Part shown: piece after piece, positions 22,364 through 64,000 of the stretch | Layout: each line of letters begins with the position of its first letter | How positions within the stretch are numbered: position 1 is the first letter of the stretch | Virus record (IMG/VR): IMGVR_UViG_3300035698_029839 | Span: 233,711-297,710 of that record | Length of the DNA stretch: 64,000 bases | Direction: 5' to 3' (one strand) | The notes under the pieces: generated by a model | Told to the model about the DNA's origin: nothing | The model's database searches: none | The model's input: the letters and a program-made list of their open reading frames with translations, nothing else | Translations under genes and position numbers: made by a program

Positions 22364-22368
22364 TTAAA

Positions 22369-23245: not shown

Positions 23246-23371
23246 TTTATTCCAGACAACTGGTTTTTCGTAATGATAGAATAAGAGTAGTTAAAAGAGG
23301 TAGTTTGACATTTCTTTCACTTTTTTATTTTTCTCTTGAAAGTGAAAGGGTGCTGCCATATAATAGATGAT

Positions 23372-23512
23372 GAGCAGTGGTAGAAATTGGTATGGCTACA
23401 ATAACATTAGGTAGTTGTATATATCTAGTGGTTGTGTAAGCATTTATATTGTGAACCCCCTTTTTTAAGGTCAGCGGGTCCAAACCGAAACAGGTTTAAG
23501 CCCTGTCTGCTC
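23372..23512 (+). ncRNA. tRNA-like RNA with large central insertion
   Basis: GAGCAG/CTGCTC, Leu-like D loop, ACAGG/CCTGT T stem; own TTGAAA-N17-TATAAT promoter. Confidence 0.45.
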
Positions 23513-23681
23513 TTTATAAGTTAAATAAGAAATGAGATAGTAGTTTGGTAAGCTAAAAATTAATGACACGGCTGAGGCAGGGCGACCCCCTACTACGTAG
23601 AGATCGACACTTACTTAGATTTATTTTTACCAGAATAAATTGAAAAAGTTAGTTTTTATCTATCTTATTTCTTTTTTATAT

Positions 23682-23754
23682 GCCCAGGTAGGCCAACGGC
23701 AGAGTCAACGGTCTTAAAAGCCGTAAAGTGGAGGTTCAAATCCTCTCCTGGGCA
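23682..23754 (+). tRNA. tRNA-Leu(TAA), short variable arm
   Basis: cloverleaf. Confidence 0.85.
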
Positions 23755-23784
23755 TTACGGTTTTTTAAATGTAAGGAGTAAGAA

Positions 23785-23997
23785 ATGTTAGTATTGAGTA
23801 GACAAAAAAATGAATCGATTATGATTAATGATGGAGATAGACTTATAGAGATCTGTATCGTTGATGTGCGTGGTGATAAGGTTCGACTTGGAATAACGGC
23901 TCCAAAAGATATCCCTGTTCATAGAAAAGAAATTTATGAAGCGATTCAAAGAGAAAAAGAAGAAGAACAGAATAAGGATATTTCAGATCCTCTTTAA
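23785..23997 (+). CDS. csrA: carbon storage regulator CsrA
   Basis: [34 protein letters not shown]. Confidence 0.95.
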
Positions 23998-24003
23998 AGA
24001 TAA

Positions 24004-24076
24004 GCCCAGGTAGCCCAACGGCAGAGGCGGTAGACCCAAAATCTATTTAGTGAGAGTTCGAATCTCTCTCTGGGTA
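24004..24076 (+). tRNA. tRNA-Leu(CAA), short variable arm
   Basis: cloverleaf, C33. Confidence 0.8.
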
Positions 24077-51050: not shown

Positions 51051-51088
51051 ACCCTACCTATCTTAACCCGATAGGTAGGGTCTTTTTT
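51051..51088 (+). terminator. intrinsic terminator
   Basis: ACCCTACCTATC/GATAGGTAGGGT plus T run. Confidence 0.85.
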
Positions 51089-51302: not shown

Positions 51303-52016
51303 ATGGCATTAACTAACTCAGAAAGACAGAAAAGATACAAATTAAGAAATCCTAAAAAAGCGAGATCTGGAAGAGTTAAAAATAGAAAAATTATTAGAGA
51401 ATTTTTATCTAATAATAAATGTGAATGTGGAGAATATAACCCAAATAAGCTATGTTTTCATCACAAGAATAATTCAGAAAAAGATTTTAAAATAACAAAT
51501 CTTGTATCATATAGTACAAATCGATTATTATCGGAGATATCCAAATGTATTGTATTATGTCAAAATTGTCATGCTAAATTACATATAGAACTAAAATATA
51601 AAGATCGATTATTTTTATTGCTAAATAGCTATAAGAACTCTCCTAGATATAAAAGATATAATAAAGAATCAAAACTTCTTTTATATTTCTATAAAGAGAC
51701 TTGTAATTGTTTAAATTGTAACCACGATTATAACGCCTCTCTTTGCTTTCATCATATAGATTTTGCTACAAAAAAGAAAGCAGTATCTCTCTTAAAAACT
51801 ATCCCTTCAATTAATAAAGAATTATCAAAAACTATATGTTTATGCAGAAATTGCCATGAAGATTTTCACTGTAAATATGGAAGAAAAACCAATCAATCTC
51901 AATTAGAACAATATATAGGTAAAAATGTAGAACCACTCAAAGTGGATATAAAAGATTACTTACCTCTTATCGAACAAAACATTTCTAAATACTACAACCT
52001 ATCTTTTTCCCTATAA
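51303..52016 (+). CDS. tandem-HNH endonuclease
   Basis: two LCFHH...LC.NCH units. Confidence 0.85.
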   Translation: MALTNSERQKRYKLRNPKKARSGRVKNRKIIREFLSNNKCECGEYNPNKLCFHHKNNSEKDFKITNLVSYSTNRLLSEISKCIVLCQNCHAKLHIELKYKDRLFLLLNSYKNSPRYKRYNKESKLLLYFYKETCNCLNCNHDYNASLCFHHIDFATKKKAVSLLKTIPSINKELSKTICLCRNCHEDFHCKYGRKTNQSQLEQYIGKNVEPLKVDIKDYLPLIEQNISKYYNLSFSL

Positions 52017-52368
52017 AGAGACTCCTTTTATCGAAATATCGATTAGTGGACCCTAAAAACAAAATCTAGGAAAATTCTGCCGAAAAAATAATAGATTTTT
52101 AATCTATCTCTCTAATAAATAGGCAAAAGTGAGTTTTATAACTTGAAAGTGAAAGTGATAAGATTATAATTTTGGGATAAGAAATAAGAGAGAAATCGGT
52201 AAAACGGAGATAAATGAATGAAAACAAATGATATAATCGAAAAGATATCAGAAGAAATGGTTTGTGAGAATGCTTGTCCTCAATTTCAACAAATACATTA
52301 TGAAATAGAAAAATGCACTTGTTATAAAAAAGAAGTAATCGAATCAGTTAAAGAGCTTGGGAATAAGA

Positions 52369-52740
52369 ATGGGTAAAAATATTGCCGACATAAGAAGAGA
52401 AAATGAGATAATCTATGGGACAAAGGACAACACATTTGATGATTTTCCTATAGCAATCAGGGTTAAGGTAATAACTCCTTGTGAAGATTTCACATTCTTT
52501 GATGGAGAGACTGGCGTAGTTACTCAAAATACAGGAGATTATTTAGGTATATCTGTAGAGTTTGATGATCCTCATCGTTATAGGGACGGTAGTGTGTTGA
52601 CAGGGTTTAATTTTAATCCCAAGAGCTTATGTGTTCTAAATAAGATAACAGAAGAAATAGCAGAATCGATAAGAGAAAAGATCGGTTTGGATGAATTTCA
52701 GAAAGAACGATCAGCCAGATTTATGATATTAGACTTATGA
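52369..52740 (+). CDS. hypothetical protein, ILDL-tagged
   Basis: ends RFMILDL. Confidence 0.75.
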   Translation: MGKNIADIRRENEIIYGTKDNTFDDFPIAIRVKVITPCEDFTFFDGETGVVTQNTGDYLGISVEFDDPHRYRDGSVLTGFNFNPKSLCVLNKITEEIAESIREKIGLDEFQKERSARFMILDL

Positions 52741-53054
52741 ATTATAAAGTCGGAGATAAGATTAAGATAAAAACATGGGAAGAGATGGAAAAAGAGTTTG
52801 GATTCGGAAATAATAACAAAACTATCATAACTTGTTCTGGACTTTTTAATTCTACAATGGAAAAAGAAATTGAAGAATTAAAAACTAATAGAATATTAAC
52901 AGTTAAAGAAGTAGAAATTAATCATCGTTATAGAATGAAAGAAAGAACTAGTGAAATAGCATGGACTTGGTCAGATGATATGATTAGGTGTTTAGTAAAA
53001 GACTATAAAGTACCTGACCCTATAAAATCACGATTGGAGATATTAGACTTATGA
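52737..53054 (+). CDS. SH3-like protein, ILDL-tagged
   Basis: YKVGDK..IKTW; ends RLEILDL; paralog of 53266. Confidence 0.8.
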   Translation: MNYKVGDKIKIKTWEEMEKEFGFGNNNKTIITCSGLFNSTMEKEIEELKTNRILTVKEVEINHRYRMKERTSEIAWTWSDDMIRCLVKDYKVPDPIKSRLEILDL

Positions 53055-53265
53055 CAGATGAACAGATAATAAAAAGATTTAGAAAAAGAGAAAAAATATT
53101 AGGAGTATGGTCAGCAGAAAGAGGTTATGATGCTTGGGATATTTTTATTAAAAAAGAAAAATGGTGTCAGCTATCGGCAGTTACAACAACACCATTAAAA
53201 GATATGTTAAGAAATTATCCAACAGCTAATATCGATTGGGATACAGTTACAGCTAGGAAATTAAC

Positions 53266-53598
53266 ATGAGATATAAAGTAGGAGATAAAGTAAGAATAAA
53301 GACTTGGAAACAGATGAAGAAAGAATTTAGACTAATAAAATCATCGACAGGGAAGTCTCATATGAGCATAGATATAGGTCATTATCATATAGCTTTTAAT
53401 CCAAGCACAGAAATAAAACTTAATAAATTAAATACTAATAGAATAGTAACTATTGCAAAAGTAAAAGAAACCATAAATAACAGATATTATATTATGAAAG
53501 AAATATCAAATCATATGTTTGATGAAAAAGTAATAAAGAATATAGTAAAAGAAATATATGAACCTATTTGTAGTAGATTAGAGATATTAGACTTATGA
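53266..53598 (+). CDS. SH3-like protein, ILDL-tagged
   Basis: ends RLEILDL. Confidence 0.8.
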   Translation: MRYKVGDKVRIKTWKQMKKEFRLIKSSTGKSHMSIDIGHYHIAFNPSTEIKLNKLNTNRIVTIAKVKETINNRYYIMKEISNHMFDEKVIKNIVKEIYEPICSRLEILDL

Positions 53599-53864
53599 TA
53601 AATTGGATCAATACAAAAGAAGAACTTCCCAGAGCGGGAGATTTAGTTATTATTTATAGTGAAGATAAAACAGTGATAGAAACAGAAATAGAAAAAACAA
53701 AATATTGGGCAGGTGTATGGAATGCTGAATATACTAAAGAATGGGAAAAATATAAAGAAAAATCATTATATTGTTTTTGGGCTCCAATAAATAAACCAGC
53801 ATTAGATATGCCAGTAAGGTTTATAGAATCTATAGAAAACAGATCGGATATATTAGACTTATAA
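53595..53864 (+). CDS. DUF551-like protein, ILDL-tagged
   Basis: WI...E.LP start; ends RSDILDL. Confidence 0.7.
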   Translation: MINWINTKEELPRAGDLVIIYSEDKTVIETEIEKTKYWAGVWNAEYTKEWEKYKEKSLYCFWAPINKPALDMPVRFIESIENRSDILDL

Positions 53865-54130
53865 TGACAAAAGATACTACACTTTTTAATAATAGTACTA
53901 TAGCAGAAGTACAGGAAGGTGAATACTTTCCACCTGTGAGTATAGCATGGGATAAGGATGGAAGAAGTATGTATCTTCCTGTTCATTATGAAAAGAAATT
54001 AGTGCAATACGATATATCAGTAGGACAATATGTTTATTCTGATGGAAGATTTGGAGCAACATTTTTTAAGATAAGAATAGATAATTCCAAGAACATTATA
54101 AAAGACAGATTTGAGATTTTGGACTTATGA
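53864..54130 (+). CDS. hypothetical protein, ILDL-tagged
   Basis: ends RFEILDL. Confidence 0.75.
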   Translation: MTKDTTLFNNSTIAEVQEGEYFPPVSIAWDKDGRSMYLPVHYEKKLVQYDISVGQYVYSDGRFGATFFKIRIDNSKNIIKDRFEILDL

Positions 54131-54426
54131 TAATTTGGAATAAAATAGCAGAAAAATTACCAAAGATAAATAAAAATATTTTTCTTTTTGGAGAAGAACT
54201 GCAACATATAAGATATGGTTGTTTACGTATTTTTGATCCAAAAAAATCTGAACTTTTAGATCCTAAAAAAAAGCTCAAAGAAGGAGATACTTATTGGCAG
54301 GTTCATATGAAAATAGGAGAACAATTTTGGGTATTACCAGAAAGATATCCTTATTGGTTAACTAATAAAGAATTAGTTGCACAAATAATAGAAAAAACAG
54401 ATAGACTTAATATTTTAGACTTATAA
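54127..54426 (+). CDS. hypothetical protein, ILDL-tagged
   Basis: ends RLNILDL. Confidence 0.75.
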   Translation: MIIWNKIAEKLPKINKNIFLFGEELQHIRYGCLRIFDPKKSELLDPKKKLKEGDTYWQVHMKIGEQFWVLPERYPYWLTNKELVAQIIEKTDRLNILDL

Positions 54427-54923
54427 TGCAGAATAATTTAGTAGGAAAAATGGTAACTTTTGAACAAGGCGATGATGGAATAGAAGTCACAGGAGAAGTC
54501 ATGACTCTTACTACTGACAATCATGGTAATTTACGTTTGTATGTATGGATAGCAAAAGAAAAAAAATTATTTCATGTCCCTTCTCATATTATAAAAGATA
54601 TTATTCCAAATAGAAAAGAAATAAATACTTACAAGTGGTATTCAATATTAGAAATTAAACCGCCGCTAAGTCATGCTGTTGTTGGTTTTTTCACAGAAGG
54701 AAAATACGAAAACCAAATAAGACTTTTACATCGTTATGAAGAGGCTGACGAGGAAAAGACAATAATTTTATGGACATCTATTAGTCTAAAAAATTCTGAT
54801 GAAGTTGCAGATGATGAATGGATTCCTCCTAATAGTACTATGTGGAGATTCATAGATACAGATATTCCATTAGAAATAATAGATAACCAACAAATAGATA
54901 GATTACACATATTAGATTTATAA
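54426..54923 (+). CDS. hypothetical protein, ILDL-tagged
   Basis: ends RLHILDL. Confidence 0.75.
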   Translation: MQNNLVGKMVTFEQGDDGIEVTGEVMTLTTDNHGNLRLYVWIAKEKKLFHVPSHIIKDIIPNRKEINTYKWYSILEIKPPLSHAVVGFFTEGKYENQIRLLHRYEEADEEKTIILWTSISLKNSDEVADDEWIPPNSTMWRFIDTDIPLEIIDNQQIDRLHILDL

Positions 54924-54932
54924 GGAGTAAAA

Positions 54933-55325
54933 ATGAATAAAAAAATAGATATTAAAGCAACAAGTGAAAAGATTAACCTTGCTATTATAGGTAAAACAAT
55001 GTATGATATATTTACGAGAAAGATAATAAGGCCTCCTTACTTACTCATTAGATATGCCTATAATACTAAAAGTGGCCTTATGATTTCTTTTATATTACTT
55101 CTTGTCTTATTAAGCTTATTTATATGGCTTGTAGCAGGAAACGTTTTTTGGATATCTCTTTTTCTAATGTTTATATGGTTTGTTAGTCTTATAGCTATGT
55201 TTTGTCATCATGATGATAATTATTTCCGTACTCTTGATACCGAACCCAAATGGGTTTTAAAATTTATAAAATCTTTAACTCAAATGAAAGAAGATATCAT
55301 AACAACAGATAAAGAAAGAGAGTAA
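54933..55325 (+). CDS. membrane protein
   Basis: two TM; resembles 57223 but untagged. Confidence 0.7.
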   Translation: MNKKIDIKATSEKINLAIIGKTMYDIFTRKIIRPPYLLIRYAYNTKSGLMISFILLLVLLSLFIWLVAGNVFWISLFLMFIWFVSLIAMFCHHDDNYFRTLDTEPKWVLKFIKSLTQMKEDIITTDKERE

Positions 55326-55691
55326 AAAATGCATAAACAAAAACCTGGAGACGTTAAAATAAGAATACCCAAAAGCAGACAAAAAGAGATATTTAATATA
55401 CTAATAGAATTCTTTAACAAGCATCAAATGTACGACGGAGAAAGTATTTGTCAATCAGATGACGCTATTATAGATTCTCCTGATCTTGTTGGGGACTTAG
55501 CGGATCTTTTATTTAAGGACACAGAGATAGATTATGAATAATCCGACATTAGATAAAATAAAGAATTTTGCGGTAAAAGAATTAAAGAATAAATATGGTT
55601 TCTGTGGTCTAGCTGATGGTGATGATATGTGTATAATCAATGCTACCGATTCGGAAAACAAAGATATAATTATTAAGATAGAGATTAAAAA

Positions 55692-56093
55692 ATGAAAACT
55701 TGTCCTAATCCTAAATGTGGTAGTCATAAAATAATCATATTTGACTCTGATAATAATTATTGTCAAAAATGTAATGAATGGTTTCCAGCCGTAGCTGAAG
55801 AGGAATGTATAGCAGGATGTAGAGTATATGCAAATGAAGAAATAAAACATCATAAAGATTGTCTCTATTACCCAGAAAGCTTATCAAAAATGCATGATGA
55901 TTTCAAAACAAAACATATGGAACTTATTACTAAATTAGCAGATGATATATGGGCAGTAGGAAAGAAATTAGAGTCAAGAGAATTTGAAACAAGTAAAGAA
56001 TTAAAAGTTATTTCAGGTTGTCTTCATGATATTAGAGCAGAACGTGATACTGAATGGTACAAAAAATTCAAAATAGATGAGGAAAAATCATGA
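55692..56093 (+). CDS. Zn-ribbon protein
   Basis: CPNPKC, CQKC. Confidence 0.7.
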   Translation: MKTCPNPKCGSHKIIIFDSDNNYCQKCNEWFPAVAEEECIAGCRVYANEEIKHHKDCLYYPESLSKMHDDFKTKHMELITKLADDIWAVGKKLESREFETSKELKVISGCLHDIRAERDTEWYKKFKIDEEKS

Positions 56094-57226
56094 CAACAGC
56101 AATATATGCATTTAGTGGCGACCCTATAACATATGGTCATATTGACATAATCAACAGAGCTAGAGCAACATTCGACCAGGTTATAGTAGCCATCGGAGAG
56201 AACCCTGATAAAAATTATACTTTTTCTTTAGAGGAAAGAGAAAGTATGGCTAAGCAGTGCTTCAATGATTCATCAATCAGGGTTCTCTCATTTTCTAACT
56301 TACTAGTGGACTTTGCTTATGAACAAGGAGCAAGTGTAATAATCAAAGGAGTAAGAAACTCTGCTGATTTTGACTATGAAAGTATCTTACATTCTATTGG
56401 TCAAAGTCAAGAAGTTGGAATAGATACTCACATACTCTTCGCTGACCCCAGATTGGCACACATTAGCAGTAGTGTAGTTAAGGCAATAGCACAGCATAGT
56501 GGATCGATACACGAATACGTACCACTACACGTTAAACAAGCTATTGAAGAAAAGATATATGACCAAACTATCATAGGAGTAACAGGAGAGATTTGTGCTG
56601 GCAAATCTCATATATGTAAAATGTTAAGTAGATATCAACATTTTACAGGTGGTTATCAAAACATCCACAATATAGAATTGGATCAGATTGGTCATGATAT
56701 TCTTTCTAAACTCACAGATCCACCTTATGTACAAATAAGAAAAGAGATAGGCGAATTTGCACCTACATCTATTGAAGAGGATGGTTTTATCAACAGATCA
56801 GTATTAGGATCAATAGTATTTAATGATTCTAATAAACTACAAAAATTAAACGACATAATGACTAAACCTATAATGATTAGATTAAGAAAAGAAATTTCGG
56901 GAAAGAAAGGAATAATTTTAATCAATTGTGCCTTATTGGCAGAAGCTCATATACTCCACACATGCAACAACAACACCATTCTAATAAAGGTGGATAAAGA
57001 CACTCAAAGAAAAAGATTATTGGATCGTAGGCTAACTGAAGAGCAAATAGAGACACGTCTGAATAGTCAATACACTTATGATCGTAAGAAGTATCAAATA
57101 GAAGAAAATATCTATCATAATCGACATGGTAAGTTTTGGGAAATTGATAATACTAGTATGATAACTATGGAAGATTTACATAAGGAATTTGAAAAGATAC
57201 TAACAGATATAAGAAAGAAAAATTGA
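56090..57226 (+). CDS. coaD: phosphopantetheine adenylyltransferase fused to dephospho-CoA kinase (CoaD-CoaE)
   Basis: AIY.FS.DPITYGHIDII.RA, KGVRN..DFDYE, ISSSVVK; then IGVTG.I.AGKS, D.IGH, INRS.LG.IVF, RL.SQ. Confidence 0.9.
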   Translation: MTTAIYAFSGDPITYGHIDIINRARATFDQVIVAIGENPDKNYTFSLEERESMAKQCFNDSSIRVLSFSNLLVDFAYEQGASVIIKGVRNSADFDYESILHSIGQSQEVGIDTHILFADPRLAHISSSVVKAIAQHSGSIHEYVPLHVKQAIEEKIYDQTIIGVTGEICAGKSHICKMLSRYQHFTGGYQNIHNIELDQIGHDILSKLTDPPYVQIRKEIGEFAPTSIEEDGFINRSVLGSIVFNDSNKLQKLNDIMTKPIMIRLRKEISGKKGIILINCALLAEAHILHTCNNNTILIKVDKDTQRKRLLDRRLTEEQIETRLNSQYTYDRKKYQIEENIYHNRHGKFWEIDNTSMITMEDLHKEFEKILTDIRKKN

Positions 57227-57657
57227 TGAATACATTATATTATTTTATCACGCGAAAAATAATTAGGAGTACTTTTGCTAATATACATATAGTATTTAAA
57301 TCTTTATTTTACATGTTGTCAATAGCAAGTTTATCAACTATTCTTCCTATTATTTTTAGGACATATTTATTTTTTCCTACTCCAAATGCAATGGGAATTC
57401 TTACTATTATATATCTTGCTATTTTTGGAATTCTTCTTTTTATACGTCTTATACAGATATTAGATTGGTATGATATAGAGGATGAACCACATTTTGTCCA
57501 ACAATTTATTGAAGATTGCTGTCGTTCTGATAATAATTTAGAAGAAAAGTATAAACAAGAAAAAGAAGTAAGATTACAAGTAATAAAACAAAAGAAAGAA
57601 GCAAAAAGACTCAAAGCAGAACTAATTAATAATAGAACTGATATATTAGACCTATAA
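57223..57657 (+). CDS. membrane protein, ILDL-tagged
   Basis: ends RTDILDL. Confidence 0.75.
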   Translation: MMNTLYYFITRKIIRSTFANIHIVFKSLFYMLSIASLSTILPIIFRTYLFFPTPNAMGILTIIYLAIFGILLFIRLIQILDWYDIEDEPHFVQQFIEDCCRSDNNLEEKYKQEKEVRLQVIKQKKEAKRLKAELINNRTDILDL

Positions 57658-58151
57658 AAAAGTTTTAAATAGAAAAGGAGTAAATAATGTCAAGACATGC
57701 AGAATTAAGAAAAGAAGAGGGAGTAGAGCATGTATCAACAAAAGAAGATGGAGCTTTGAAGTGCTGGAGAGATCAACATAGAATATGTTCTTCTCAATGT
57801 GTTGCTTGGGTAAAGATGGGAACTACTAGAAAGATCTATTGTAAAGCCTTGCCATCAGGACAACATGAGATTGCCGAATATGTTGAAGAAGAGAATGGAG
57901 CATAATACGCCATTTAAAGAACAAAATATTAAATATGTCACGATTGAGGGTAAAGAGCCTATTTGTTTTTCTTGGGGAATAAATAGCTTTGGTTTTGGTA
58001 CAACAACTTTCTTTTATGAAGATGATAAATTAAAGTGTGATAATGAAACTCTTAGTAAAGATAGTATAAAAAAGATTCTTTGTGCTTTGGTCGATGAAGC
58101 AGAGTTTATAGATAAATAGAACCAGTTTAATCTTATTCCCGAAAAAATATT

Positions 58152-58523
58152 ATGATACTTAATTTTATTTTATATGGTTATATTGTTCCATTGATATGGG
58201 CTATTATTATTGGTCAGGTTGTGATTTATTTTGATTCTGAATATCGATCATGGGAGATAGGGAAAAAAATAGGGATTCATCTCCATTATTTTGTGATATC
58301 TTTTATTCCTGTTGCTGCTCCTGTTGCTCTTACTCTCATAGCAGGAATAGATTTGAGAGAACATTATAAGCGTAGACACAATGATGATGGAGAAAATTTT
58401 GACAATTATAGAACATTTAGGGAATCAGAAGAGGCAGAACTTGCAAAGAATATTGGTATTAAAATAGTTAAAAATGAGAAGATCAACCCTATAACTGATC
58501 GATTAGAGATATTGGACTTATAA
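58152..58523 (+). CDS. membrane protein, ILDL-tagged
   Basis: ends RLEILDL. Confidence 0.75.
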   Translation: MILNFILYGYIVPLIWAIIIGQVVIYFDSEYRSWEIGKKIGIHLHYFVISFIPVAAPVALTLIAGIDLREHYKRRHNDDGENFDNYRTFRESEEAELAKNIGIKIVKNEKINPITDRLEILDL

Positions 58524-58699
58524 TGCGTTGTCATATTTGTAAAAAAGAAATAGAAGGAAATTATCATAAACACACTTGCGATATTGATGGTATAGATGAA
58601 GAATTTTATACTCATCCTGGAGATTGTGATAAAAAATTTCTTGATGAATCTACAAATAAAAAACCTGCAAATAGTAGGTTTGAGATATTAGACTTATGA
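58523..58699 (+). CDS. 58-aa Zn-finger protein, ILDL-tagged (absent from ORF track)
   Basis: MRCHICKKEI...FYTHPGDCD...RFEILDL; paralog of 58696. Confidence 0.75.
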   Translation: MRCHICKKEIEGNYHKHTCDIDGIDEEFYTHPGDCDKKFLDESTNKKPANSRFEILDL

Positions 58700-58896
58700 T
58701 GGAATTTGGAAATACATTTAAATGTCATACTTGCAGAAAAGAAATAAACAAAGATTATCATAGATATCATCATAGTCTCGATAATATAGAGCTAAATTTT
58801 TATACTCATCATGGGATTTGTGATACAATATTTCGTGGTAAATATGTTAAACCTTTTGAAGAAATAGATAATCGATTAGAGATATTGGACTTATGA
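58696..58896 (+). CDS. Zn-finger protein, ILDL-tagged
   Basis: ends RLEILDL. Confidence 0.75.
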   Translation: MMEFGNTFKCHTCRKEINKDYHRYHHSLDNIELNFYTHHGICDTIFRGKYVKPFEEIDNRLEILDL

Positions 58897-59255
58897 AGAA
58901 TAACTTTTTAAAATTAAAAAAGAATAAACATTATAAATTTGTTTTATTAGATCCTGATCGAATGATATCATTAACGATATCGAAACCTGATAAGAAAAAA
59001 TTTTTTAAGTCCTCCACAAAAAATAAAACGGCAGCAAAAACAACACATTCTTCTTATGGAACTTATTCTAGGAATCTTATGATGGGTCATGCAACCCTTG
59101 TATCTATTCAAGATGCATTAGGCAGTTGTGAAACTTTAAGACAGATGGAGGCAGATATGATAAAAGATACAGAACAAGGCATAAATAAGAAAATATTTTG
59201 TCCTCATTGTGAGGCAGAAAAGATACATGACAGATTCGAGATATTGGACTTATGA
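58893..59255 (+). CDS. hypothetical protein, ILDL-tagged
   Basis: ends RFEILDL. Confidence 0.75.
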   Translation: MKNNFLKLKKNKHYKFVLLDPDRMISLTISKPDKKKFFKSSTKNKTAAKTTHSSYGTYSRNLMMGHATLVSIQDALGSCETLRQMEADMIKDTEQGINKKIFCPHCEAEKIHDRFEILDL

Positions 59256-59596
59256 GTGTAATAACAATTATATTAATAATATATCTAATTCAATTAATGG
59301 TATCTTGTCCAATTTTTTCAATAATTTGGTACAGGGATAATATAAAAAATGGAAAAAGAAAAGCAATACTTGAAGCTTGTAAGGGAGGACTTATAAGTTT
59401 TGTACCAGTAATACCTATAATGGCAATAACGTATTTAATTTATATAGAAACTGGAAATGAATTTAAAAAATGGTTAAAAAATGATCCTACTTCTCCTGAC
59501 AATATGAATGATCCAGATTTTATTCTTCCGCAAAAAAAGATCAAGAAAATAATTTTAGAACCAATAAAAAACAGAACAGATATTTTAGATTTATAA
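59252..59596 (+). CDS. membrane protein, ILDL-tagged
   Basis: ends RTDILDL. Confidence 0.75.
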   Translation: MSVITIILIIYLIQLMVSCPIFSIIWYRDNIKNGKRKAILEACKGGLISFVPVIPIMAITYLIYIETGNEFKKWLKNDPTSPDNMNDPDFILPQKKIKKIILEPIKNRTDILDL

Positions 59597-59613
59597 TACT
59601 GGAGATAAAAATT

Positions 59614-59922
59614 ATGTCTTTTTTATATTTTTATATTATTTCGTCATTATGGTGTGTAATAATCGGCCAGATTATAGCTTTTTTTGAATGGAAATCAGAT
59701 CCAGGAAGGCCAAGGATAGTTATTCATATCGGAATTTTTGTTTTGTCTTTTGTCCCTATTATTAGCCCTTTTATAGCAACTCTTGCATTGATTGTTAAAT
59801 CAATTGATTATTCATATAAGAAAATTTTGGAATGGGTTCAGACAGCCCCATTTCCTAAAGTTATTAAGAATAAAAAACCAATCGATTTTATCGAAGAACG
59901 TGTTAATATTTTAGATTTGTGA
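59614..59922 (+). CDS. membrane protein, ILDL-tagged
   Basis: ends RVNILDL; similar to 58152. Confidence 0.75.
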   Translation: MSFLYFYIISSLWCVIIGQIIAFFEWKSDPGRPRIVIHIGIFVLSFVPIISPFIATLALIVKSIDYSYKKILEWVQTAPFPKVIKNKKPIDFIEERVNILDL

Positions 59923-59929
59923 GAAAAAT

Positions 59930-60418
59930 ATGGTTAGAAAGAAAATATTTAAAGATTTATTTGATCGAGAAATAAAAGTTGAGGATATTGTTCTTAATGT
60001 TTGGGCAAATAATGAGAGTTATAGGATGCAAGGAGAAGGAGATCCAGGAGTTGTCCAATATAGGACAGCTAAAGTAATAAAATTCTGTCCTCAGAGTATT
60101 AGAATAGAATATATGCAAGGTAAAACCTTAAAAGATAGTAGTATCTATAATACTCATAATAGGATTATTGTCATGACAAAAAATAAAGAAATTGTTGATA
60201 CTTCCGATATAGACAAGGAAATGGAAATAAAAAACGCTGAAATAGAAGTGAGAAATAAAACAATAAAAAGATTAATGAAAGATTTAGGAACGAATGCCAA
60301 ATATAAAAAAGAAGCAGATGAAGAAATAGAAAATTATATAGAAAAAATAGAAGAGTTAGAAAGTACTATTGATAAGTTGATACAAGATTATAAAAGATTT
60401 AGTTTATTAGATTTATAA
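59930..60418 (+). CDS. coiled-coil protein, LLDL-tagged
   Basis: ends RFSLLDL. Confidence 0.75.
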   Translation: MVRKKIFKDLFDREIKVEDIVLNVWANNESYRMQGEGDPGVVQYRTAKVIKFCPQSIRIEYMQGKTLKDSSIYNTHNRIIVMTKNKEIVDTSDIDKEMEIKNAEIEVRNKTIKRLMKDLGTNAKYKKEADEEIENYIEKIEELESTIDKLIQDYKRFSLLDL

Positions 60419-60431
60419 GAACGGAGTTATT

Positions 60432-60977
60432 ATGGAAGAATACGCTTCAGAACAAGAACAAATAGATTATGAAAGGATTAAGGATGGTGACTATTTATTT
60501 TCTTTAGGTATAGATATTACTCCTCTTTTAGAAGAACTGCTTAAACAAGATACAGAAGGTTTAACTATAAGTCCATTAAAAGAAGGAGAAGAAATAGAAT
60601 ATGAAGGTAAATTAGAAGATTTGAGAGTTATGTGTAAAAATGAAGAAATGTCTTTATGTGCTATAAAATATGTTATTCCTCTTGATAACGAAAAAAGAGA
60701 GAATTATCATGTTTTGAGTCATTATATAGTAGTTTTAGTAAAAGAAATTGACATAGAAGATGAAAGTAGTTTAATGCATAAAATAAAATTTCAAGAACAA
60801 GTTCTTATTACTCTTAGGAAAATTACAGATTATTTTGAGATGGGAAGACCTCCATTATGTTTTTATTTATATTTCCCAGAAAATATAATTATTGATAATG
60901 ATGGTAATAAATTATGTAAGATTGAAGCACAAACGGAATGGGAGCATCACGAAGAATTTGGAGAACATAAAGATTAA
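60432..60977 (+). CDS. hypothetical acidic protein
   Basis: GGAG RBS; followed in frame by MLEILDL*. Confidence 0.75.
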   Translation: MEEYASEQEQIDYERIKDGDYLFSLGIDITPLLEELLKQDTEGLTISPLKEGEEIEYEGKLEDLRVMCKNEEMSLCAIKYVIPLDNEKRENYHVLSHYIVVLVKEIDIEDESSLMHKIKFQEQVLITLRKITDYFEMGRPPLCFYLYFPENIIIDNDGNKLCKIEAQTEWEHHEEFGEHKD

Positions 60978-61006
60978 ATGTTAGAGATATTAGATTTATG
61001 AATAGA

Positions 61007-62137
61007 TTATCTATATTCTATTTTACAAGCAGCAGAAATTCTTAATATATCCAAACCAGACAAATCATCATTAACTGAAAATCTTAATATATCATTATCT
61101 TCTGGTTTTAGAATTATAGGTTCTAGTATTGTGTTTCTTACTGACAACCATGTATTTGTTTTTCCTGCGCTTCCATGTGCAACTATTTCTGCTCCTGATA
61201 ATTGCAAGATGTCAGATAATTGTTGAGCAATTGCAGCAAAAGCAACTTCCCCATTTATTATTCTCTGGTATACTATTCCAGAGGCTGCTGATACCCCTAG
61301 AAAAGAATCGTATGGGATATAGGGCATTGTAGGAGAAGTTATGTTATCAACTCCTCCGTCTATTGTGCTGTCAAAGGTATTATTTGCCAAAAAATAAGAA
61401 AGTTCATGAACATGTACCCATGTTCCTAATTTAGGGGTAATATCAAAATTCCCAGATCCAGGGATGTTAGAAATTCCTTCAAACTGTATATCGTCCATAT
61501 AAAATTTAGGTAATTTGCCTTCTTCGTCAATAATTTCTACTCGTAAAGCATTTAAGGTTTCTCCTGTTAGTGCCATATCTTCTAATGGAATAGTTATTCG
61601 TTGCCAAACTTTGAAGATATTCCAACTAAAATAATCTTCTAAACCAACACTATTTCCTACCATTGTTCCTGCTCCTACGTCCCATCCATAAACTTCAATA
61701 CTATCTCCTGCTTTCCAGTCTTTATCTACATATATCCATATTATTAAAAATTGATAATTTGTTAAAATTAGATCAGAACCTTTAGCTATTTGCAAAGTAT
61801 CATTAAGGTCTCCATTATCATATTTTATACTTTGAGTTCCTCCTCCTGTATGATTTTGATCTGTGCTATCAATATCCCATTTTCTTCCACTAATTATAGA
61901 AGCGGTCCAATAAGAATTGTCTGTTCCATCATTAATATTTTCTGTATAATCAACAGTTCTTCCTATATTCATATCAATACCATATTCAGAACTGGTAAAG
62001 TATCGAATACTATTTTCATATTTTTTGAGTGGATGGGTTGCTACTACTAAACCATTATTGCTATCTTTATCATCATGAGTGATGACATGAGCATTTTTGT
62101 GATTTTTAGGATCTGTTATATAACTATCTATTCCCAT
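61007..62137 (-). CDS. putative virion protein with carbohydrate-binding-like beta domain
   Basis: G/T/D-rich, W..I.IPL.D..FY.DDIQF pattern. Confidence 0.6.
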   Translation of the reverse strand: MGIDSYITDPKNHKNAHVITHDDKDSNNGLVVATHPLKKYENSIRYFTSSEYGIDMNIGRTVDYTENINDGTDNSYWTASIISGRKWDIDSTDQNHTGGGTQSIKYDNGDLNDTLQIAKGSDLILTNYQFLIIWIYVDKDWKAGDSIEVYGWDVGAGTMVGNSVGLEDYFSWNIFKVWQRITIPLEDMALTGETLNALRVEIIDEEGKLPKFYMDDIQFEGISNIPGSGNFDITPKLGTWVHVHELSYFLANNTFDSTIDGGVDNITSPTMPYIPYDSFLGVSAASGIVYQRIINGEVAFAAIAQQLSDILQLSGAEIVAHGSAGKTNTWLSVRNTILEPIILKPEDNDILRFSVNDDLSGLDILRISAACKIEYR

Positions 62138-62139
62138 AA

Positions 62140-62727
62140 TTATCCTATTGAAGATGCGCTATGATAATTAAATATTAATGTTATATCTACTTCTGTTCCT
62201 GTTTGGGAGGTATATATAGTAATTATATTATTTTTTGGGACAATAATATCCTGATCAAAGTTAAAAGAATTTATATCATCAGAAGATCCGACATAAATTC
62301 TTTCAAGTTCAGTTCCTCCTGAAAGTCCTGTTATATTGTCTCCAGTTAAAAAAGTTCCTGTTGCAGTTTTACCACTTCCTAAATTTAAATTAGATGGAGT
62401 GGCTGCTATCCCTCCAATTGGAGTTCCTGTATCTTTTCCTTCTATTTTTATTATTTCTGATTGTCCAGTTCCTGCTAATCTATAATGTATTCCTTCAAGA
62501 ATCATGTCGGTATTATCAGTATTTTTTATATAACAAATACAAACATCTCCAGTATCAGCCGAAGGATCAGCATATGTGGGAGTTTGTTGAAGAATTAGAT
62601 TAAAAGCTAGTCCTTCTTCATGATTAACATGATGTTCTGTTGATGAAGTAATAGCTATTGTTTTTAACCTATTTTCAGTATTAACTCCAGCCGAAAATCC
62701 TGTCCCTTGGCCATCTTCAATTAGCAT
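62140..62727 (-). CDS. putative virion protein, IEDG.G.G family
   Basis: paralog of 63380 and 62759. Confidence 0.65.
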   Translation of the reverse strand: MLIEDGQGTGFSAGVNTENRLKTIAITSSTEHHVNHEEGLAFNLILQQTPTYADPSADTGDVCICYIKNTDNTDMILEGIHYRLAGTGQSEIIKIEGKDTGTPIGGIAATPSNLNLGSGKTATGTFLTGDNITGLSGGTELERIYVGSSDDINSFNFDQDIIVPKNNIITIYTSQTGTEVDITLIFNYHSASSIG

Positions 62728-62758
62728 TGTATTTTCTCCTTATTTTCTTTATATTTAA

Positions 62759-63366
62759 TTACTCTTCGAACCAGTCTATTGTTACTCTTGTTTTTGTCCC
62801 AGCGGATTCAGCCGATCCTTTAATCCCTATTGATTGATTTCTTCCTAAAATTATAGCATCATTAAAATTAACAGTAAAAGAATTAGATCCGCTTATTCTA
62901 ATAGTATATATACTATCTCCTCCAGAGATTATAAGAGGAGTTGTAACGTCATTATGTATACAAGTTGTTTCTGATGTTAAGGCAGATGTTGCATTCATAT
63001 TAGAAGGTATTTTTTCTTCTCCACCTGATAAGGTTGTTGGTTTTAACCATACTCCGAATTTTGTTAATCCAGTTAATGGCTCTTCTGTAGAAAAAGTCAT
63101 TCCATGTACATATAATTTATCATCTCCCGTATATGTTATATATCCCACTCCTTCTGTTGCTCCTCCTAAAAGTTGTGTTGCTGGTAAGTTTATAACAAAA
63201 GCTTTTTGCTCATCTTTTGAAACATAATAAATACGAGCATTAGATCTAGCACTAGTATCTAATCTATTAGTGTCAGTTACACCAGCTTTTTTCCCTGACC
63301 CCTTGCCATCTTCTATAACTGAAATAATACACCTTGCCTTTCTTTATACTTGAGAATGTATCCCAT
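62759..63366 (-). CDS. putative virion protein, IEDG.G.G family, frameshifted N-terminus
   Basis: RBS+ATG at 63366 stops at 63313; IEDGKGSGKKAG frame is open from about 63343 to 62759. Confidence 0.5.
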
Positions 63367-63379
63367 TTATTTTCTCCTA

Positions 63380-63967
63380 TTATTCACTTGCATATCCTAA
63401 TATATTAATAGATCCTTCTCCTGTTTCTTCTCCTTTTAAGTTTACCGATAATGTATCGTTTGTACCTAAAATAATACTGCCATCGGTATGATAATAAGCA
63501 GGAGCTTTACTATAGCACCAATAAAAAGCAGTGGTTCCTGGAGTATGTCCTATCATTCCATCACCAGCAGAATCGTCCCAATATAAAACAGTTAGATCTA
63601 TTGTATTTACTGAGGTTCTGTTTAAATTTCCTGCTCCTCCTATTATTATATTGGTATCTGGAACTGTATCTCCGAAAATTAATTCCCCAAAACAACATGT
63701 ATTATGACTGGCAGTTCCTCCGTTCCAGTTAAACCAAAGATCTGTAATAAAAAATTTTGAAGAAGAAGATGTATTTTTAATAAATAACATTCTTCCACCT
63801 GTTGTTGTTACTGTTAGCATAGGCGTAGAAATACCAAAAGCACTATCAAATTCATGACTTTTATGAGATAAGGTGCTTTCAGTAACCGCCTTTGTTAGTA
63901 AAAGATTATTTGCATCAATTTGAGCTTTCTTACCTGATCCCTTACCATCTTCTATTATAATTCCCAT
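63380..63967 (-). CDS. putative virion protein, IEDG.G.G family
   Basis: MGIIIEDGKGSGKKA. Confidence 0.65.
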   Translation of the reverse strand: MGIIIEDGKGSGKKAQIDANNLLLTKAVTESTLSHKSHEFDSAFGISTPMLTVTTTGGRMLFIKNTSSSSKFFITDLWFNWNGGTASHNTCCFGELIFGDTVPDTNIIIGGAGNLNRTSVNTIDLTVLYWDDSAGDGMIGHTPGTTAFYWCYSKAPAYYHTDGSIILGTNDTLSVNLKGEETGEGSINILGYASE

Positions 63968-64000
63968 ATTCTATTCCCTATTTAATCTTTATCTCTATAT

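What the first reader, a model, noticed from the sequence alone, without database searches (positions are those of the whole stretch)
52357..61001. Shared C-terminal peptide tag R-x-x-(I/L)-L-D-L on 15 mostly unrelated proteins
Seen: ORFs ending at 52740, 53054, 53598, 53864, 54130, 54426, 54923, 57657, 58523, 58699, 58896, 59255, 59596, 59922 and 60418 all end in RxxILDL (one LLDL). Their bodies differ: membrane, Zn-finger, SH3-like, coiled coil. Codons vary synonymously (R AGA/CGA/AGG/CGT; I ATA/ATT; D GAC/GAT; L TTA/TTG/CTA) and the stop is TAA or TGA, which points to protein-level selection. Interspersed genes such as coaD-coaE are untagged. Inference: a modular docking or addressing signal, such as a degron/PDZ-type ligand, a sliding-clamp-like binding motif, or a virion/compartment loading signal. 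Translational coupling is a weaker alternative because most copies lack GGAG.
Basis: partly seen in the sequence, partly recalled or inferred. Interest (0 to 1): 0.85.

Follow-up and report, generated by a model that had tools for sequence, protein, structure and literature searches.

The report
Shared C-terminal tag in huge phages
In one group of very large bacteriophages, dozens of small, otherwise unrelated proteins per genome end in the same 7-12 residue peptide (consensus [E/D]-P-I-x-[N/S/D]-R-F-[E/D]-I-L-D-L), which selection keeps at the protein level; it looks like an undescribed address or docking label whose receptor is still unknown.

Summary
Fifteen ORFs at 52357-60418 end in R-x-x-[IL]-L-D-L-stop, against 0.02 expected from shuffles. 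A sixteenth, broken copy lies at 60978-61001.

The tag extends far beyond the window:
- It recurs in other clusters of the same 297,710-bp phage contig.
- It occurs in 351-kb and 548-kb phage contigs and in more than 100 metagenome loci.
- In all, 384 distinct tagged ORFs fall into 140 unrelated body families.
- Cellular genomes show it only at chance level.

The full motif is [ED]-P-I-x-[NSD]-R-F-[ED]-I-L-D-L. It is terminal in 307 of 331 cases (21 more within 8 residues of the end, 3 internal), and some lineages add 1-4 polar residues.

Variation is almost entirely synonymous. Homologues with 20-40% identical bodies keep about 90% identical tags. SH3-like homologues in other phages lack the tag. 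An AlphaFold model puts it on a flexible tail. It is therefore a protein-level, portable short linear motif.

A second, weaker RNA-level signal overlaps it: GAG at position -5 acts as a Shine-Dalgarno-like element where the next gene starts in TTATGA.

Best reading: a docking or addressing peptide for one common receptor, most plausibly a many-site phage-built assembly or a catalytic machine. Clamp binding, a degron and translation-level roles remain rivals. I found no prior description.

The parts
52357..52740 (+). Tagged ORF 1 (127 aa from TTG, or 123 aa from ATG 52369); ends RFMILDL; tag codons 52717-52737
   Evidence: belongs to a family in which the tag varies (RFEIMDL, RFELMDL, RFDMMDL)
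52737..53054 (+). Tagged ORF 2, SH3-like 'MxYKVGD' family (105 aa); ends PIKSRLEILDL
   Evidence: AlphaFold model pLDDT 84 with the last 15 residues at about 60. SH3_15 / Mind bomb repeat similarity
53266..53598 (+). Tagged ORF 3, paralogue of ORF 2 (110 aa); ends PICSRLEILDL
53595..53864 (+). Tagged ORF 4 (89 aa). The DUF551 domain covers residues 4-68; the tail ...SIENRSDILDL lies beyond the domain
53864..54130 (+). Tagged ORF 5 (88 aa); ends IIKDRFEILDL
54127..54426 (+). Tagged ORF 6 (99 aa); ends EKTDRLNILDL
54426..54923 (+). Tagged ORF 7 (165 aa); ends QIDRLHILDL; followed by a gap with its own GGAG
57223..57657 (+). Tagged ORF 8 (144 aa), two membrane-spanning segments and then a 61-residue soluble tail; ends NNRTDILDL. 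Its weak paralogue 54933..55325 has no tag
58152..58523 (+). Tagged ORF 9 (123 aa), two membrane-spanning segments; ends PITDRLEILDL
58523..58699 (+). Tagged ORF 10 (58 aa), Cys/His Zn-ribbon-like; ends ANSRFEILDL
58696..58896 (+). Tagged ORF 11 (66 aa), paralogue of ORF 10; ends EIDNRLEILDL
58893..59255 (+). Tagged ORF 12 (120 aa); ends KIHDRFEILDL
59252..59596 (+). Tagged ORF 13 (114 aa), two membrane-spanning segments; ends PIKNRTDILDL
59614..59922 (+). Tagged ORF 14 (102 aa), two membrane-spanning segments, paralogue of ORF 9; ends IEERVNILDL
59930..60418 (+). Tagged ORF 15 (162 aa), coiled-coil-like C-terminal half; ends DYKRFSLLDL
   Evidence: homologues in L015, L115, L155 and L119 are also tagged
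60978..61001 (+). Sixteenth, broken copy: ATG TTA GAG ATA TTA GAT TTA TGA (MLEILDL-stop). It is in frame with ORF 60432..60977 and directly after its TAA; Arg is replaced by Met. Either a tag just cut off by a nonsense change or a 7-codon mini-ORF
   Evidence: The only homologue (L119) is cut by its contig end. The large-database search found nothing
52143..52170 (+). Best sigma-70-like promoter match of the region (TTGAAA-16-TATAAT, 11 of 12), upstream of the cluster
   Evidence: a consensus match only, and the number of such sites in the region is not above shuffles
56090..57226 (+). Untagged CoaD-CoaE fusion gene inside the cluster. It shows the tag is not a property of every gene end here; the other untagged ORFs are 53051..53269, 54933..55325, 55329..55541, 55534..55695, 55692..56093, 57687..57905, 57865..58119 and 60432..60977

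Best explanation
The tag is a portable short linear motif of about 12 residues at or within a few residues of the C-terminus. Its consensus is [E/D]-P-I-x-[N/S/D]-R-F-[E/D]-I-L-D-L, optionally followed by 1-4 polar residues. It sits on a flexible, E/K/P-rich linker. I propose that it docks a large, fast-evolving repertoire of small accessory proteins onto one common receptor. At least 28 tagged proteins occur in the roughly 100 kb of this genome that I could see. They include SH3-like, Zn-ribbon, DUF551, coiled-coil and a few membrane proteins.

Shown: the motif exists, it is selected as protein, it is positionally constrained to the C-terminus, it is modular, and it is confined to one group of huge phages.

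Inferred: it works by binding a shared partner. Many different clients are made together, so the partner should either offer very many equivalent sites or act catalytically. A many-site partner would be a phage-built assembly such as the capsid interior or scaffold (cargo that would be co-injected) or a replication or compartment shell or filament. A catalytic partner would be an unfoldase/protease, an export machine or a modifying enzyme. My leading concrete guess is loading onto or recruitment to a phage-built assembly. This would work like the T4 capsid-targeting sequence or encapsulin cargo peptides, but at the C-terminus and on far more proteins.

A secondary function rides on the same codons. 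Where the next gene starts in the TTATGA overlap, codon -5 is kept as GAG and serves as a Shine-Dalgarno-like element.

Confidence is about 0.6 for the general docking-peptide mechanism and about 0.25-0.3 for the assembly-loading version.
For: Reality and excess: 15 observed against 0.02 in shuffles.

Spread:
- Other clusters lie on the same contig, and the tag occurs on 351-kb and 548-kb phage contigs.
- A 36-nt degenerate pattern found 105 metagenome loci.
- There are 384 distinct tagged ORFs in 702 kb, in 140 body clusters.

Protein-level selection:
- Every position varies synonymously (R is AGA/AGG/CGT/CGA/CGG; D is 99% against E 1%, although GAA is the commonest acidic codon).
- Pairs with 20-40% identical bodies keep about 90% identity in the last 7 residues, and synonymous codon differences are about 3 times the amino-acid differences.

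Position: 328 of 331 motif occurrences lie within 8 residues of the C-terminus, 307 of them exactly terminal.

Modularity:
- Only 6 weak Pfam hits among 125 family representatives.
- The DUF551 domain ends before the tail.
- SH3-like homologues in other viral contigs lack the tag and have no tagged neighbours.
- Some paralogues within tag-bearing genomes lack it.

Structure: the AlphaFold body has pLDDT 80-93, while the last 15 residues are at about 60 with a 4-residue helix. The linker is enriched in E, K and P.

Lineage-specific variants (ILDL, ILDI, ILDIR.., IMDF[DE]) cluster by genome, as expected for co-evolution with a partner.

The tag is not needed for coupling: 129 tags are followed by a gap before the next ATG (in the smaller 67-tag sample, such gaps carried a GGAG/GAG-type match), and 17 have no nearby downstream ATG.
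Against: No receptor was identified. I saw only about a third of this genome, and most of its genes have no recognisable family.

No expression-timing or virion-content data exist, so assembly loading is a guess from analogy and stoichiometry. About 3% of tagged proteins have membrane-spanning segments, which fits capsid cargo poorly, although ejection proteins of other phages do have such segments.

The tagged clusters lie among replication and metabolism genes and behind a sigma-70-like promoter match. That pattern is more typical of early genes than of virion components.

Part of the codon uniformity within this window (GAC in 11 of 16 copies, GAG in 9 of 9) reflects recent common descent or a junction constraint rather than protein function.
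Confidence: 0.6

Rival explanations
1. The tag is a sliding-clamp-binding motif. It would tether small proteins to the beta-type clamp used by the phage replisome and so to replicating DNA, or it would block the host clamp.
For: The three most invariant tag residues, L(-3) D(-2) L(-1), equal positions 2-4 of the bacterial consensus Q-L-[S/D]-L-F (established knowledge).

E. coli Pol IV binds the clamp through its extreme C-terminus. That C-terminus reads ...LDPQMERQLVLGL. It shares D/E-P at -12/-11, R at -7, V/I at -4, L at -3 and L at -1 with the tag consensus.

T4 uses a C-terminal hydrophobic/acidic motif on unrelated proteins: gp43 ends ...SLDFLFG and gp55 ends ...SLDFLYEAND.

Relatives of this phage encode a DnaE whose C-terminal half ends exactly at the position of the E. 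coli internal clamp motif: [ST][VI]D[LM]FA against 920-QADMF-924. A beta-type clamp is therefore part of their replication.
Against: The Gln at position 1 and the terminal aromatic residue, the main anchor of the motif, are absent from all of about 400 tags. The same phages' polymerase keeps the aromatic residue.

The most conserved tag residues, R(-7) and F(-6), have no counterpart in the clamp consensus.

Dozens of co-expressed clients would compete with the polymerase for two pockets per clamp.

No clamp gene was found in the sampled 700 kb: there was no gp45 hit and no DNA_pol3_beta among the listed families.

The Pol IV resemblance was noticed post hoc.
Confidence: 0.15
2. The tag is a degradation or turnover signal. 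An ATP-dependent protease (FtsH, Lon, Clp, or a phage-encoded one) or its adaptor would read it, giving many accessory proteins a short, shared lifetime.
For: The motif is terminal, exposed and partly non-polar, on a flexible tail. It occurs on both soluble and membrane proteins, as FtsH substrates do. A catalytic receptor removes the stoichiometry problem. The carriers are small accessory proteins that may be needed only transiently.
Against: The invariant Asp at -2 and Glu/Asp at -5 are unlike known bacterial C-terminal degrons. Known examples such as ssrA end in small non-polar residues, and acidic substitutions there block ClpX recognition (established knowledge).

Variants with charged extensions (..ILDIRKD..IMDFD) are common.

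The tag is found only in phages and not in cellular genomes, so no host protein uses it.
Confidence: 0.12
3. The tags bind one another, or bind the tag-like N-terminal motif M-x(1-12)-R-F-D-L-L-I-F-E-D-A-Q of two conserved Cys-rich proteins encoded next to tagged genes. The result would be mixed oligomers or a scaffolded complex.
For: Two untagged families (L001:7847-8191 and L001:8207-8665, with relatives) start with R-F-[DE]-[LI]-L-[IV]-F. This is the same R-F-acid-hydrophobic-L core as the tag. They lie in conserved synteny directly after tagged genes.
Against: The AlphaFold model of that family is only moderate (pLDDT 74), and its N-terminal 20 residues are of low confidence. No contact information was available. 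The families were seen in only some loci. The resemblance may be a recombination by-product.
Confidence: 0.08
4. The primary function is translational. The conserved codons or nascent peptide would promote termination-reinitiation coupling to the next gene.
For: Half of the tags (190 of 375) overlap the next start codon in TTATGA. In those, codon -5 is GAG in 142/190 cases, against 31/129 when a gap follows (Fisher p = 2e-9). The background share of GAG among Glu codons is 24%.
Against: The other six or more positions are conserved as amino acids with free synonymous change.

129 tags are followed by a gap before the next ATG and 17 have no downstream ATG nearby.

Variants with 1-8 extra residues move the motif away from the stop codon.

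Untagged genes in the same operon are coupled equally tightly.

Many overlapping junctions are tandem paralogues, so the counts are not independent.
Confidence: 0.04
5. The motif is a DNA-level element, such as a recombination or shuffling cassette or a promoter, or a functionless remnant of one ancestral gene end spread by duplication.
For: An 11-copy direct repeat of about 39 nt is detectable in the window at 67-82% identity. GAC and GAG are over-used within this genome. The tags lie at gene junctions in regions of high gene turnover.
Against: Between genomes the DNA differs at nearly every synonymous site while the peptide stays fixed. Frame and position relative to the stop are constant in 384 cases. 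D is never replaced by E (1%), although that is a single-base change. There is no Rfam match. The motif is at chance level in 596 Gb of cellular genomes and is not clustered there.
Confidence: 0.03

Closest known systems
T4 capsid-targeting sequence (CTS) of the internal proteins IPI-III, Alt and others
   Same: A roughly 10-residue terminal peptide is shared by small, polymorphic, otherwise unrelated phage accessory proteins. It routes them to one phage-built structure. (Established knowledge of T4; not tested here.)
   Different: The CTS is N-terminal and is cleaved off by the prohead protease at L/I-x-E. It is carried by fewer than ten proteins. The present tag is C-terminal, shows no recognisable cleavage site, has a different sequence, and is carried by dozens of proteins per genome.
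Encapsulin cargo-loading peptides
   Same: A short C-terminal peptide on a flexible linker, attached to unrelated cargo proteins, binds the inside of an HK97-fold shell.
   Different: The sequences differ: encapsulin peptides are Gly/Ser/Leu-rich, whereas this tag is R-F-[ED]-I-L-D-L. No encapsulin-type shell gene was seen near the tagged genes. The number and diversity of carriers is much larger here.
Bacterial beta-clamp-binding motifs (Q-L-[SD]-L-F; Pol IV C-terminal Q-L-V-L-G-L) and the T4 gp45-binding C-termini (S-L-D-F-L-[FY])
   Same: A short hydrophobic/acidic motif lies at or within 0-4 residues of the C-terminus of unrelated proteins and is read by one hub. The L-D-L core matches. 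The spacing of P, R, V/I, L and L matches the E. coli Pol IV tail.
   Different: The tag lacks the Gln and the terminal aromatic anchor. Its invariant R-F has no counterpart. The phages' own DnaE carries a canonical [ST][VI]D[LM]F motif distinct from the tag. The number of carriers is an order of magnitude higher.
ssrA-type C-terminal degrons and PDZ/tail-specific-protease ligands
   Same: An exposed extreme C-terminal peptide with non-polar residues at -1 and -3.
   Different: The tag has an invariant Asp at -2 and an acidic residue at -5. 38% of the representatives of one family carry extra charged residues after the motif, so a free carboxylate at L(-1) is not required.
PeSL mobile regulatory cassettes of T4-type phages
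   Same: A repeated element at the junctions of small genes in highly variable regions of large phage genomes.
   Different: PeSLs are intergenic DNA elements (a stem-loop plus an early promoter). Here the conserved unit is coding, in a fixed frame, and conserved as peptide and not as DNA.

Membership tests
Bacterial beta-clamp-binding motif (Q-L-[S/D]-L-F or Q-L-x-L-x-L) | Gln at position 1 | tested here: not met
   The corresponding position is I (77%), L or M in the pentapeptide register, or F in the hexapeptide register; it is never Q.
Bacterial beta-clamp-binding motif (Q-L-[S/D]-L-F or Q-L-x-L-x-L) | L at position 2, S/D at position 3, L/M at position 4 | tested here: met
   L(-3) is 100%, D(-2) is 99% and L(-1) is 93% in 179 non-seed tags.
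Bacterial beta-clamp-binding motif (Q-L-[S/D]-L-F or Q-L-x-L-x-L) | Aromatic or large hydrophobic residue at position 5 (pentapeptide form) | tested here: not met
   A stop codon follows L(-1) in 307 of 328 near-terminal cases; otherwise R, D, E, S or G follows. The phage DnaE keeps the F.
Bacterial beta-clamp-binding motif (Q-L-[S/D]-L-F or Q-L-x-L-x-L) | Physical binding to the hydrophobic cleft of the clamp | not testable with these tools
   No complex prediction or assay was available, and no clamp gene was found in the sampled sequence.
T4-type gp45-binding C-terminal motif (S-L-D-F-L-[FY]) | Sequence S-L-D-F-L-[FY] within 0-4 residues of the C-terminus, together with a gp45-type clamp in the genome | tested here: not met
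   T4 gp43 and gp55 tails were read; only L-D is shared. tblastn of T4 gp45, gp44, gp62, gp43 and gp55 against the window and loci gave no hit.
PDZ / tail-specific-protease C-terminal ligand | The motif must end in the free alpha-carboxylate | tested here: inconclusive
   Most tags are exactly terminal (307 of 328 near-terminal). However, 57 of the 150 best representatives of the SH3-like family carry 1-4 extra residues (ILDIR, ILDIRD, IMDFD, ILDLRGH.).
ssrA/ClpX-type C-terminal degron | The last residues are small and non-polar (e.g. L-A-A), with no acidic residue at -1 or -2 | tested here: not met
   D at -2 is invariant.
T4 capsid-targeting sequence | N-terminal location and a prohead-protease site (L/I-x-E) after it | tested here: not met
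   The motif is C-terminal in 328 of 331 cases and never N-terminal. This concerns membership only; an analogous function is not excluded.
Encapsulin cargo-loading peptide | C-terminal peptide on unrelated cargo, on a flexible linker | tested here: met
Encapsulin cargo-loading peptide | Gly/Ser/Leu-type consensus and an adjacent encapsulin shell gene | tested here: not met
   The consensus is R-F-[ED]-I-L-D-L. No such family appears among the Pfam hits of neighbouring genes; only the first 25 families of each scan were listed.
DNA-level junction cassette (PeSL-like) | Conserved as DNA, intergenic, with a stem-loop and promoter | tested here: not met
   The unit is coding and in a fixed frame, and variation is synonymous. 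The DNA repeat is only 67-82% identical over 39 nt. There is no Rfam hit.
Shine-Dalgarno element for the downstream gene | A purine-rich GAG/GGAG 5-13 nt upstream of the next start codon, enriched only where it is needed | tested here: met
   GAG at -5 lies 11 nt before the overlapping ATG. It occurs in 142/190 overlapping junctions against 31/129 gapped ones, p = 2e-9. This explains one codon, not the motif.

The most novel reading that the evidence does not exclude
A clade of huge phages uses a proteome-wide address code. One 12-residue C-terminal peptide routes dozens of rapidly diversifying small proteins per genome (thousands of sequence clusters in metagenomes) to a single phage-built destination. 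That destination could be the capsid interior, so that a cocktail of ready-made effectors is injected with the DNA, or a replication compartment. This would be the first general sorting signal described for bacteriophage proteins. It would also give a one-line sequence rule for listing a phage's delivered or compartment-resident effectors.
Probability: 0.3. Interest if true: 0.92.

Novelty: new variant of a known kind. Interest (0 to 1): 0.8.

Why it matters
Nearly all of the several hundred tagged proteins are 'dark matter' with no recognisable family. A shared, strictly conserved terminal peptide is the first handle on them. It says they are used together, by one machine or at one place.

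If the receptor is found, one experiment would assign a common fate to a large part of the accessory proteome of an uncultivated group of huge phages. That fate could be packaging, localisation, turnover or clamp tethering.

The motif is a simple regular expression, so the whole client set of any related genome can be listed from sequence alone. A short transferable peptide that directs arbitrary cargo to a phage structure or a host hub would also be a useful tool.

The codon data also give a clean natural example of one stretch serving two readers: a peptide motif, and a ribosome-binding site for the overlapping next gene.

Tried and rejected
1. Near-identical or related GenBank phages. Megablast of the region found nothing. 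tblastn of a large window ORF found only a distant Acinetobacter phage ATPase.

2. Annotation of the tagged proteins. Pfam and PHROGs gave essentially nothing.

3. Search for a receptor gene (clamp, PDZ protease, Clp, encapsulin-like) among neighbours.
- Pfam on 130 and 44 neighbouring ORFs and on 30 window ORFs found replication, NAD-salvage, ADP-ribosylation, actin-like and other genes, but no obvious peptide-binding hub.

4. T4 replisome and late-transcription proteins against all the sequence I held: no hits.

5. The broken 16th copy. The only homologue of ORF 60432 is truncated by a contig end, and the 5.8-billion-protein search returned nothing, so I could not show whether its relatives carry an intact tag.

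6. ESM Atlas with the tail alone: no meaningful lead, scores about 0.5.

7. AlphaFold of the N-terminal-motif family: moderate confidence, and no contact output to judge whether the motif docks on the Cys-rich domain.

8. Literature searches for EILDL, FEILDL, RFEILD, RFDILD and descriptive phrases found no description of the motif.

9. Ideas rejected.
- Stop-codon recoding: TAG also terminates tagged ORFs, and no suppressor tRNA is present.
- A known RNA element.
- A eukaryotic-type nuclear-export-like reading of I-xxx-F-xx-L-x-L: the genomes are phage-like, with overlapping genes, Shine-Dalgarno sites and tRNA arrays.

Full report
**1. Observation**

The ORF ending at 60418 has LLDL. There is one further copy at 60978-61001. 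It reads ATG TTA GAG ATA TTA GAT TTA TGA, in frame with ORF 60432..60977 and immediately after its TAA.

No other [ILVM]LDL-stop exists in the window. In 300 dinucleotide-preserving shuffles the pattern appears 0.02 times on average and never more than once.

**2. Source and spread**

An exact 18-mer from the tag located the source: the window is the last 64 kb of the IMG/VR contig IMGVR_UViG_3300035698_029839, which is 297,710 bp long. It is AT-rich (about 31% G+C) and the window carries 33 tRNA genes.

A degenerate 24-nt pattern found further tag clusters elsewhere on this contig. It also found them on a 350,866-bp contig, a 547,943-bp contig and a 33.5-kb viral contig.

The same pattern in 596 Gb of bacterial and archaeal genomes gave 77 scattered single hits. 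My back-of-envelope expectation, assuming equal base frequencies, is about 50. Fifty-eight of the 77 are not at the end of any ORF of 30 codons or more. Cellular genomes therefore do not use the tag.

A 36-nt pattern encoding P-I-x-x-R-F-[ED]-I-L-D-L-stop, which has essentially no chance expectation, hit 105 metagenome loci, many with 2-4 matches. Over 125 loci (702 kb) there are 384 distinct ORFs of 30 aa or more ending in R-x-x-[ILMVF]-L-[DE]-[LIMVF]. Only three [ILMVF]-L-[DE]-[LIMVF] ends lack the Arg.

**3. Protein or DNA?**

In the 179 instances that do not match my search patterns, the consensus is:

| Position | Residue |
|---|---|
| -12 | [ED] |
| -11 | P (34%) |
| -10 | I (63%) |
| -8 | [NSD] |
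| -7 | R (fixed by the selection pattern; only 3 of 387 candidate ends lacked it) |
| -6 | F (79%; otherwise L, W, Y) |
| -5 | [ED] (86%) |
| -4 | I (77%) |
| -3 | L (100%) |
| -2 | D (99%) |
| -1 | L (93%; otherwise I) |

Every conserved residue is written with several codons (Arg with five). Asp is almost never Glu, although GAA is the commonest acidic codon of these genomes.

Among homologous pairs whose bodies are only 20-40% identical, the last seven residues are about 90% identical. Synonymous codon differences in the tag outnumber amino-acid differences about three to one. The DNA repeat itself is only 67-82% identical over 39 nt, and there is no Rfam match. The motif is selected as a peptide.

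**4. A second reader of the same codons**

Codon -5 is GAG far more often than background: 70% of Glu codons against 24%. The excess is concentrated where the next gene's ATG is formed by the TTATGA overlap. There GAG occurs in 142/190 cases, against 31/129 where a gap follows (Fisher p = 2e-9). GAG lies 11 nt before that ATG.

I read this as a Shine-Dalgarno-like constraint superimposed on the peptide. Many overlapping junctions belong to tandem paralogues, so the counts are not independent. This cannot explain the motif as a whole, for three reasons:
- 129 tags are followed by a gap before the next ATG. In the smaller sample, such gaps carried a GGAG- or GAG-type match before that ATG.
- 17 tags have no downstream ATG nearby.
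- Untagged genes in the same operon overlap their neighbours just as tightly.

**5. Anatomy**

The motif R[FWYL][DE][ILMF][LMI]D[LIF] occurs 328 times within eight residues of a C-terminus, 307 of them exactly terminal. It occurs three times internally, and two of those look like gene fusions. It never occurs at an N-terminus.

Some lineages add a short polar extension (..ILDIR..ILDIRKD..ILDLRK..IMDF[DE]..LLDFED) or vary the hydrophobic residues (IMDL, IIDL, MMDL). Among the 150 best representatives of the SH3-like family in a 1.84-billion-protein library, 90 are exactly terminal, 57 are extended and 3 are untagged. That family has 2136 representative clusters at E <= 1e-3. Variants cluster by genome. 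The free carboxylate at L(-1) is therefore usual but not obligatory.

The 15 residues before the motif are enriched in E, K and P. In an AlphaFold model of the window's protein 52737..53054 the body scores block-mean pLDDT 80-93, while the last 15 residues score about 60 and form only a four-residue helix. The [S/N/D]-R-F-E arrangement is a helix N-capping box (my inference).

**6. The carriers**

The bodies fall into 140 BLAST clusters. The largest, with 120 members, is an SH3-like domain beginning MKYKVGD. The rest are small families or singletons.

Of 125 cluster representatives, only six have even a weak Pfam hit (DUF551, Zn ribbons). The median length is 100 aa and the maximum is 273 aa. 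Eleven of 355 have membrane-spanning segments, and four of those eleven are in this window. No enzyme or large structural protein carries the tag.

The tag is an add-on:
- The DUF551 model ends at residue 68 of the 89-aa protein 53595..53864.
- SH3-like homologues in 35 other viral contigs end differently and have no tagged neighbours.
- Some paralogues within tag-bearing genomes stop just before the linker (L212, L215).
- The weak paralogue pair 54933 (untagged) and 57223 (tagged) differs in the same way.

**7. The sixteenth copy**

MLEILDL follows a TAA in frame with ORF 60432. The usual Arg codon is ATG, and the codon before it is the stop. The simplest reading is a tag recently disconnected by a nonsense change, with the remaining codons still intact. 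A 7-codon mini-ORF cannot be excluded. The one homologue is cut by a contig end, and the large protein search found nothing.

**8. How it most likely works**

Shown: a portable, exposed, near-terminal peptide is under strong purifying selection on unrelated bodies, confined to one phage group, with lineage-specific variants.

Inferred: it is a docking or addressing motif read by one common partner.

Dozens of different clients are encoded per genome: at least 28 in the roughly 100 kb of this contig that I could see. A low-copy stoichiometric hub would be saturated. This favours one of two kinds of partner:
- a receptor with very many equivalent sites, such as the capsid interior or scaffold, a compartment shell or a filament;
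- a catalytic reader, such as an unfoldase/protease, an exporter or a modifying enzyme.

The closest phage precedent is the T4 capsid-targeting sequence on polymorphic internal proteins. The closest formal analogue is the encapsulin cargo peptide. I therefore put loading onto a phage-built assembly first, at about 0.25-0.3 within a total of about 0.6 for docking in general.

Against this version, the clusters lie among replication and metabolism genes and behind a sigma-70-like promoter match, and a few carriers are membrane proteins.

**9. The clamp lead**

Relatives of this phage encode a split, intein-bearing DnaE. Its C-terminal half ends ...GVE[ST][VI]D[LM]FA. This falls exactly where E. 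coli DnaE has its internal clamp-binding motif, 920-QADMF-924. A beta-type clamp is therefore central to their replication.

The tag's invariant L-D-L equals positions 2-4 of Q-L-[SD]-L-F. E. coli Pol IV, which binds the clamp through its extreme C-terminus, ends LDPQMERQLVLGL. It shares [DE]-P, R, V/I, L and L at the same distances from the end. T4's clamp-binding tails (SLDFLFG, SLDFLYEAND) are similar in kind.

Several points speak against clamp binding:
- The Gln and the aromatic anchor are absent from every tag, while the polymerase keeps the aromatic residue.
- R(-7) and F(-6) are unexplained.
- Competition with the polymerase would be severe.
- No clamp gene was found in the sampled DNA.

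I rate this rival at 0.15.

**10. Other rivals**

- A degron (0.12) fits the exposure of the tag and its presence on both soluble and membrane proteins. It does not fit the invariant Asp at -2 or the charged extensions.
- Tag-tag or tag-pseudotag association (0.08) is suggested by two conserved, syntenic Cys-rich families that begin with M-x(1-12)-R-F-D-L-L-I-F-E-D-A-Q. The model of that family is uninformative.
- Translation-level and DNA-level explanations (0.04 and 0.03) are contradicted by sections 3-5.

**11. Novelty**

Full-text searches for the peptide and for descriptive phrases found nothing. The kind of thing is known: a short terminal address shared by unrelated proteins. This motif, its scale and its restriction to a group of huge phages are, as far as I could find, undescribed. 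I file it as a new variant of a known kind. There is about a 0.3 chance that it is a general sorting code for phage proteins, which would be new in category.

Noticed in passing
L019:5233-7077, L193:5244-7214, L189:6041-8002; L156:429-3113: The phage group has a split DnaE with intein and LAGLIDADG insertions. The C-terminal half is truncated right after a canonical clamp-binding motif ([ST][VI]D[LM]FA), which aligns with E. coli QADMF 920-924. The OB-fold and tau-binding domains are missing.
   Followed up: partly
L001:7847-8191 and L001:8207-8665 (same contig as the window); L014:5715-6339 and relatives: Two tandem, conserved Cys-rich proteins begin with a tag-like N-terminal motif R-F-D-L-L-I-F-E-D-A-Q followed by a long helix. 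They always lie just downstream of tagged genes.
   Followed up: partly
window 12299-24076: An array of 33 tRNA genes covers most amino acids; no suppressor tRNA is among them.
   Followed up: no
window 56090-57226: A CoaD-CoaE (phosphopantetheine adenylyltransferase plus dephospho-CoA kinase) fusion gene sits inside the accessory cluster. It is conserved in related contigs (L137:1000-2226).
   Followed up: no
window 51303-52016: A 237-aa protein carries two HNH-endonuclease-like repeats directly upstream of the tagged cluster. A strong terminator-like hairpin lies at 51051-51081.
   Followed up: no
window 26604-27938: A phage-encoded SPFH/Band 7 family protein (Pfam E = 1.8e-6).
   Followed up: no
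loci around tagged genes (alignment A3): Neighbouring genes include a PARP-like ADP-ribosyltransferase, a Macro domain, a Volactin-like actin homologue, EF-Ts, a subtilase and an NAD-salvage set (NadE, NAPRTase, PRPP synthetase). I did not map which locus carries which.
   Followed up: no
L120:2476-2907, L152:1854-2303, L173:561-992: The only three internal copies of the motif. Two are followed by a similar sequence (..LDIRPKKIEAEGLT.. and ..LDIPLKKIESECLT..), as if a tagged gene had fused to its downstream neighbour by loss of the stop.
   Followed up: no
window 53575-53629 vs 54107-54161: The genes after two tags (53595.. and 54127..) share a similar N-terminus (MINWINTKEELP and MIIWNKIAEKLP). 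Tag and next-gene start have therefore been duplicated together at least once.
   Followed up: no
window 61007-64000 (minus strand): The strand switches and the GC skew reverses at about 61 kb. The four minus-strand ORFs here have no Pfam or PHROG match.
   Followed up: partly
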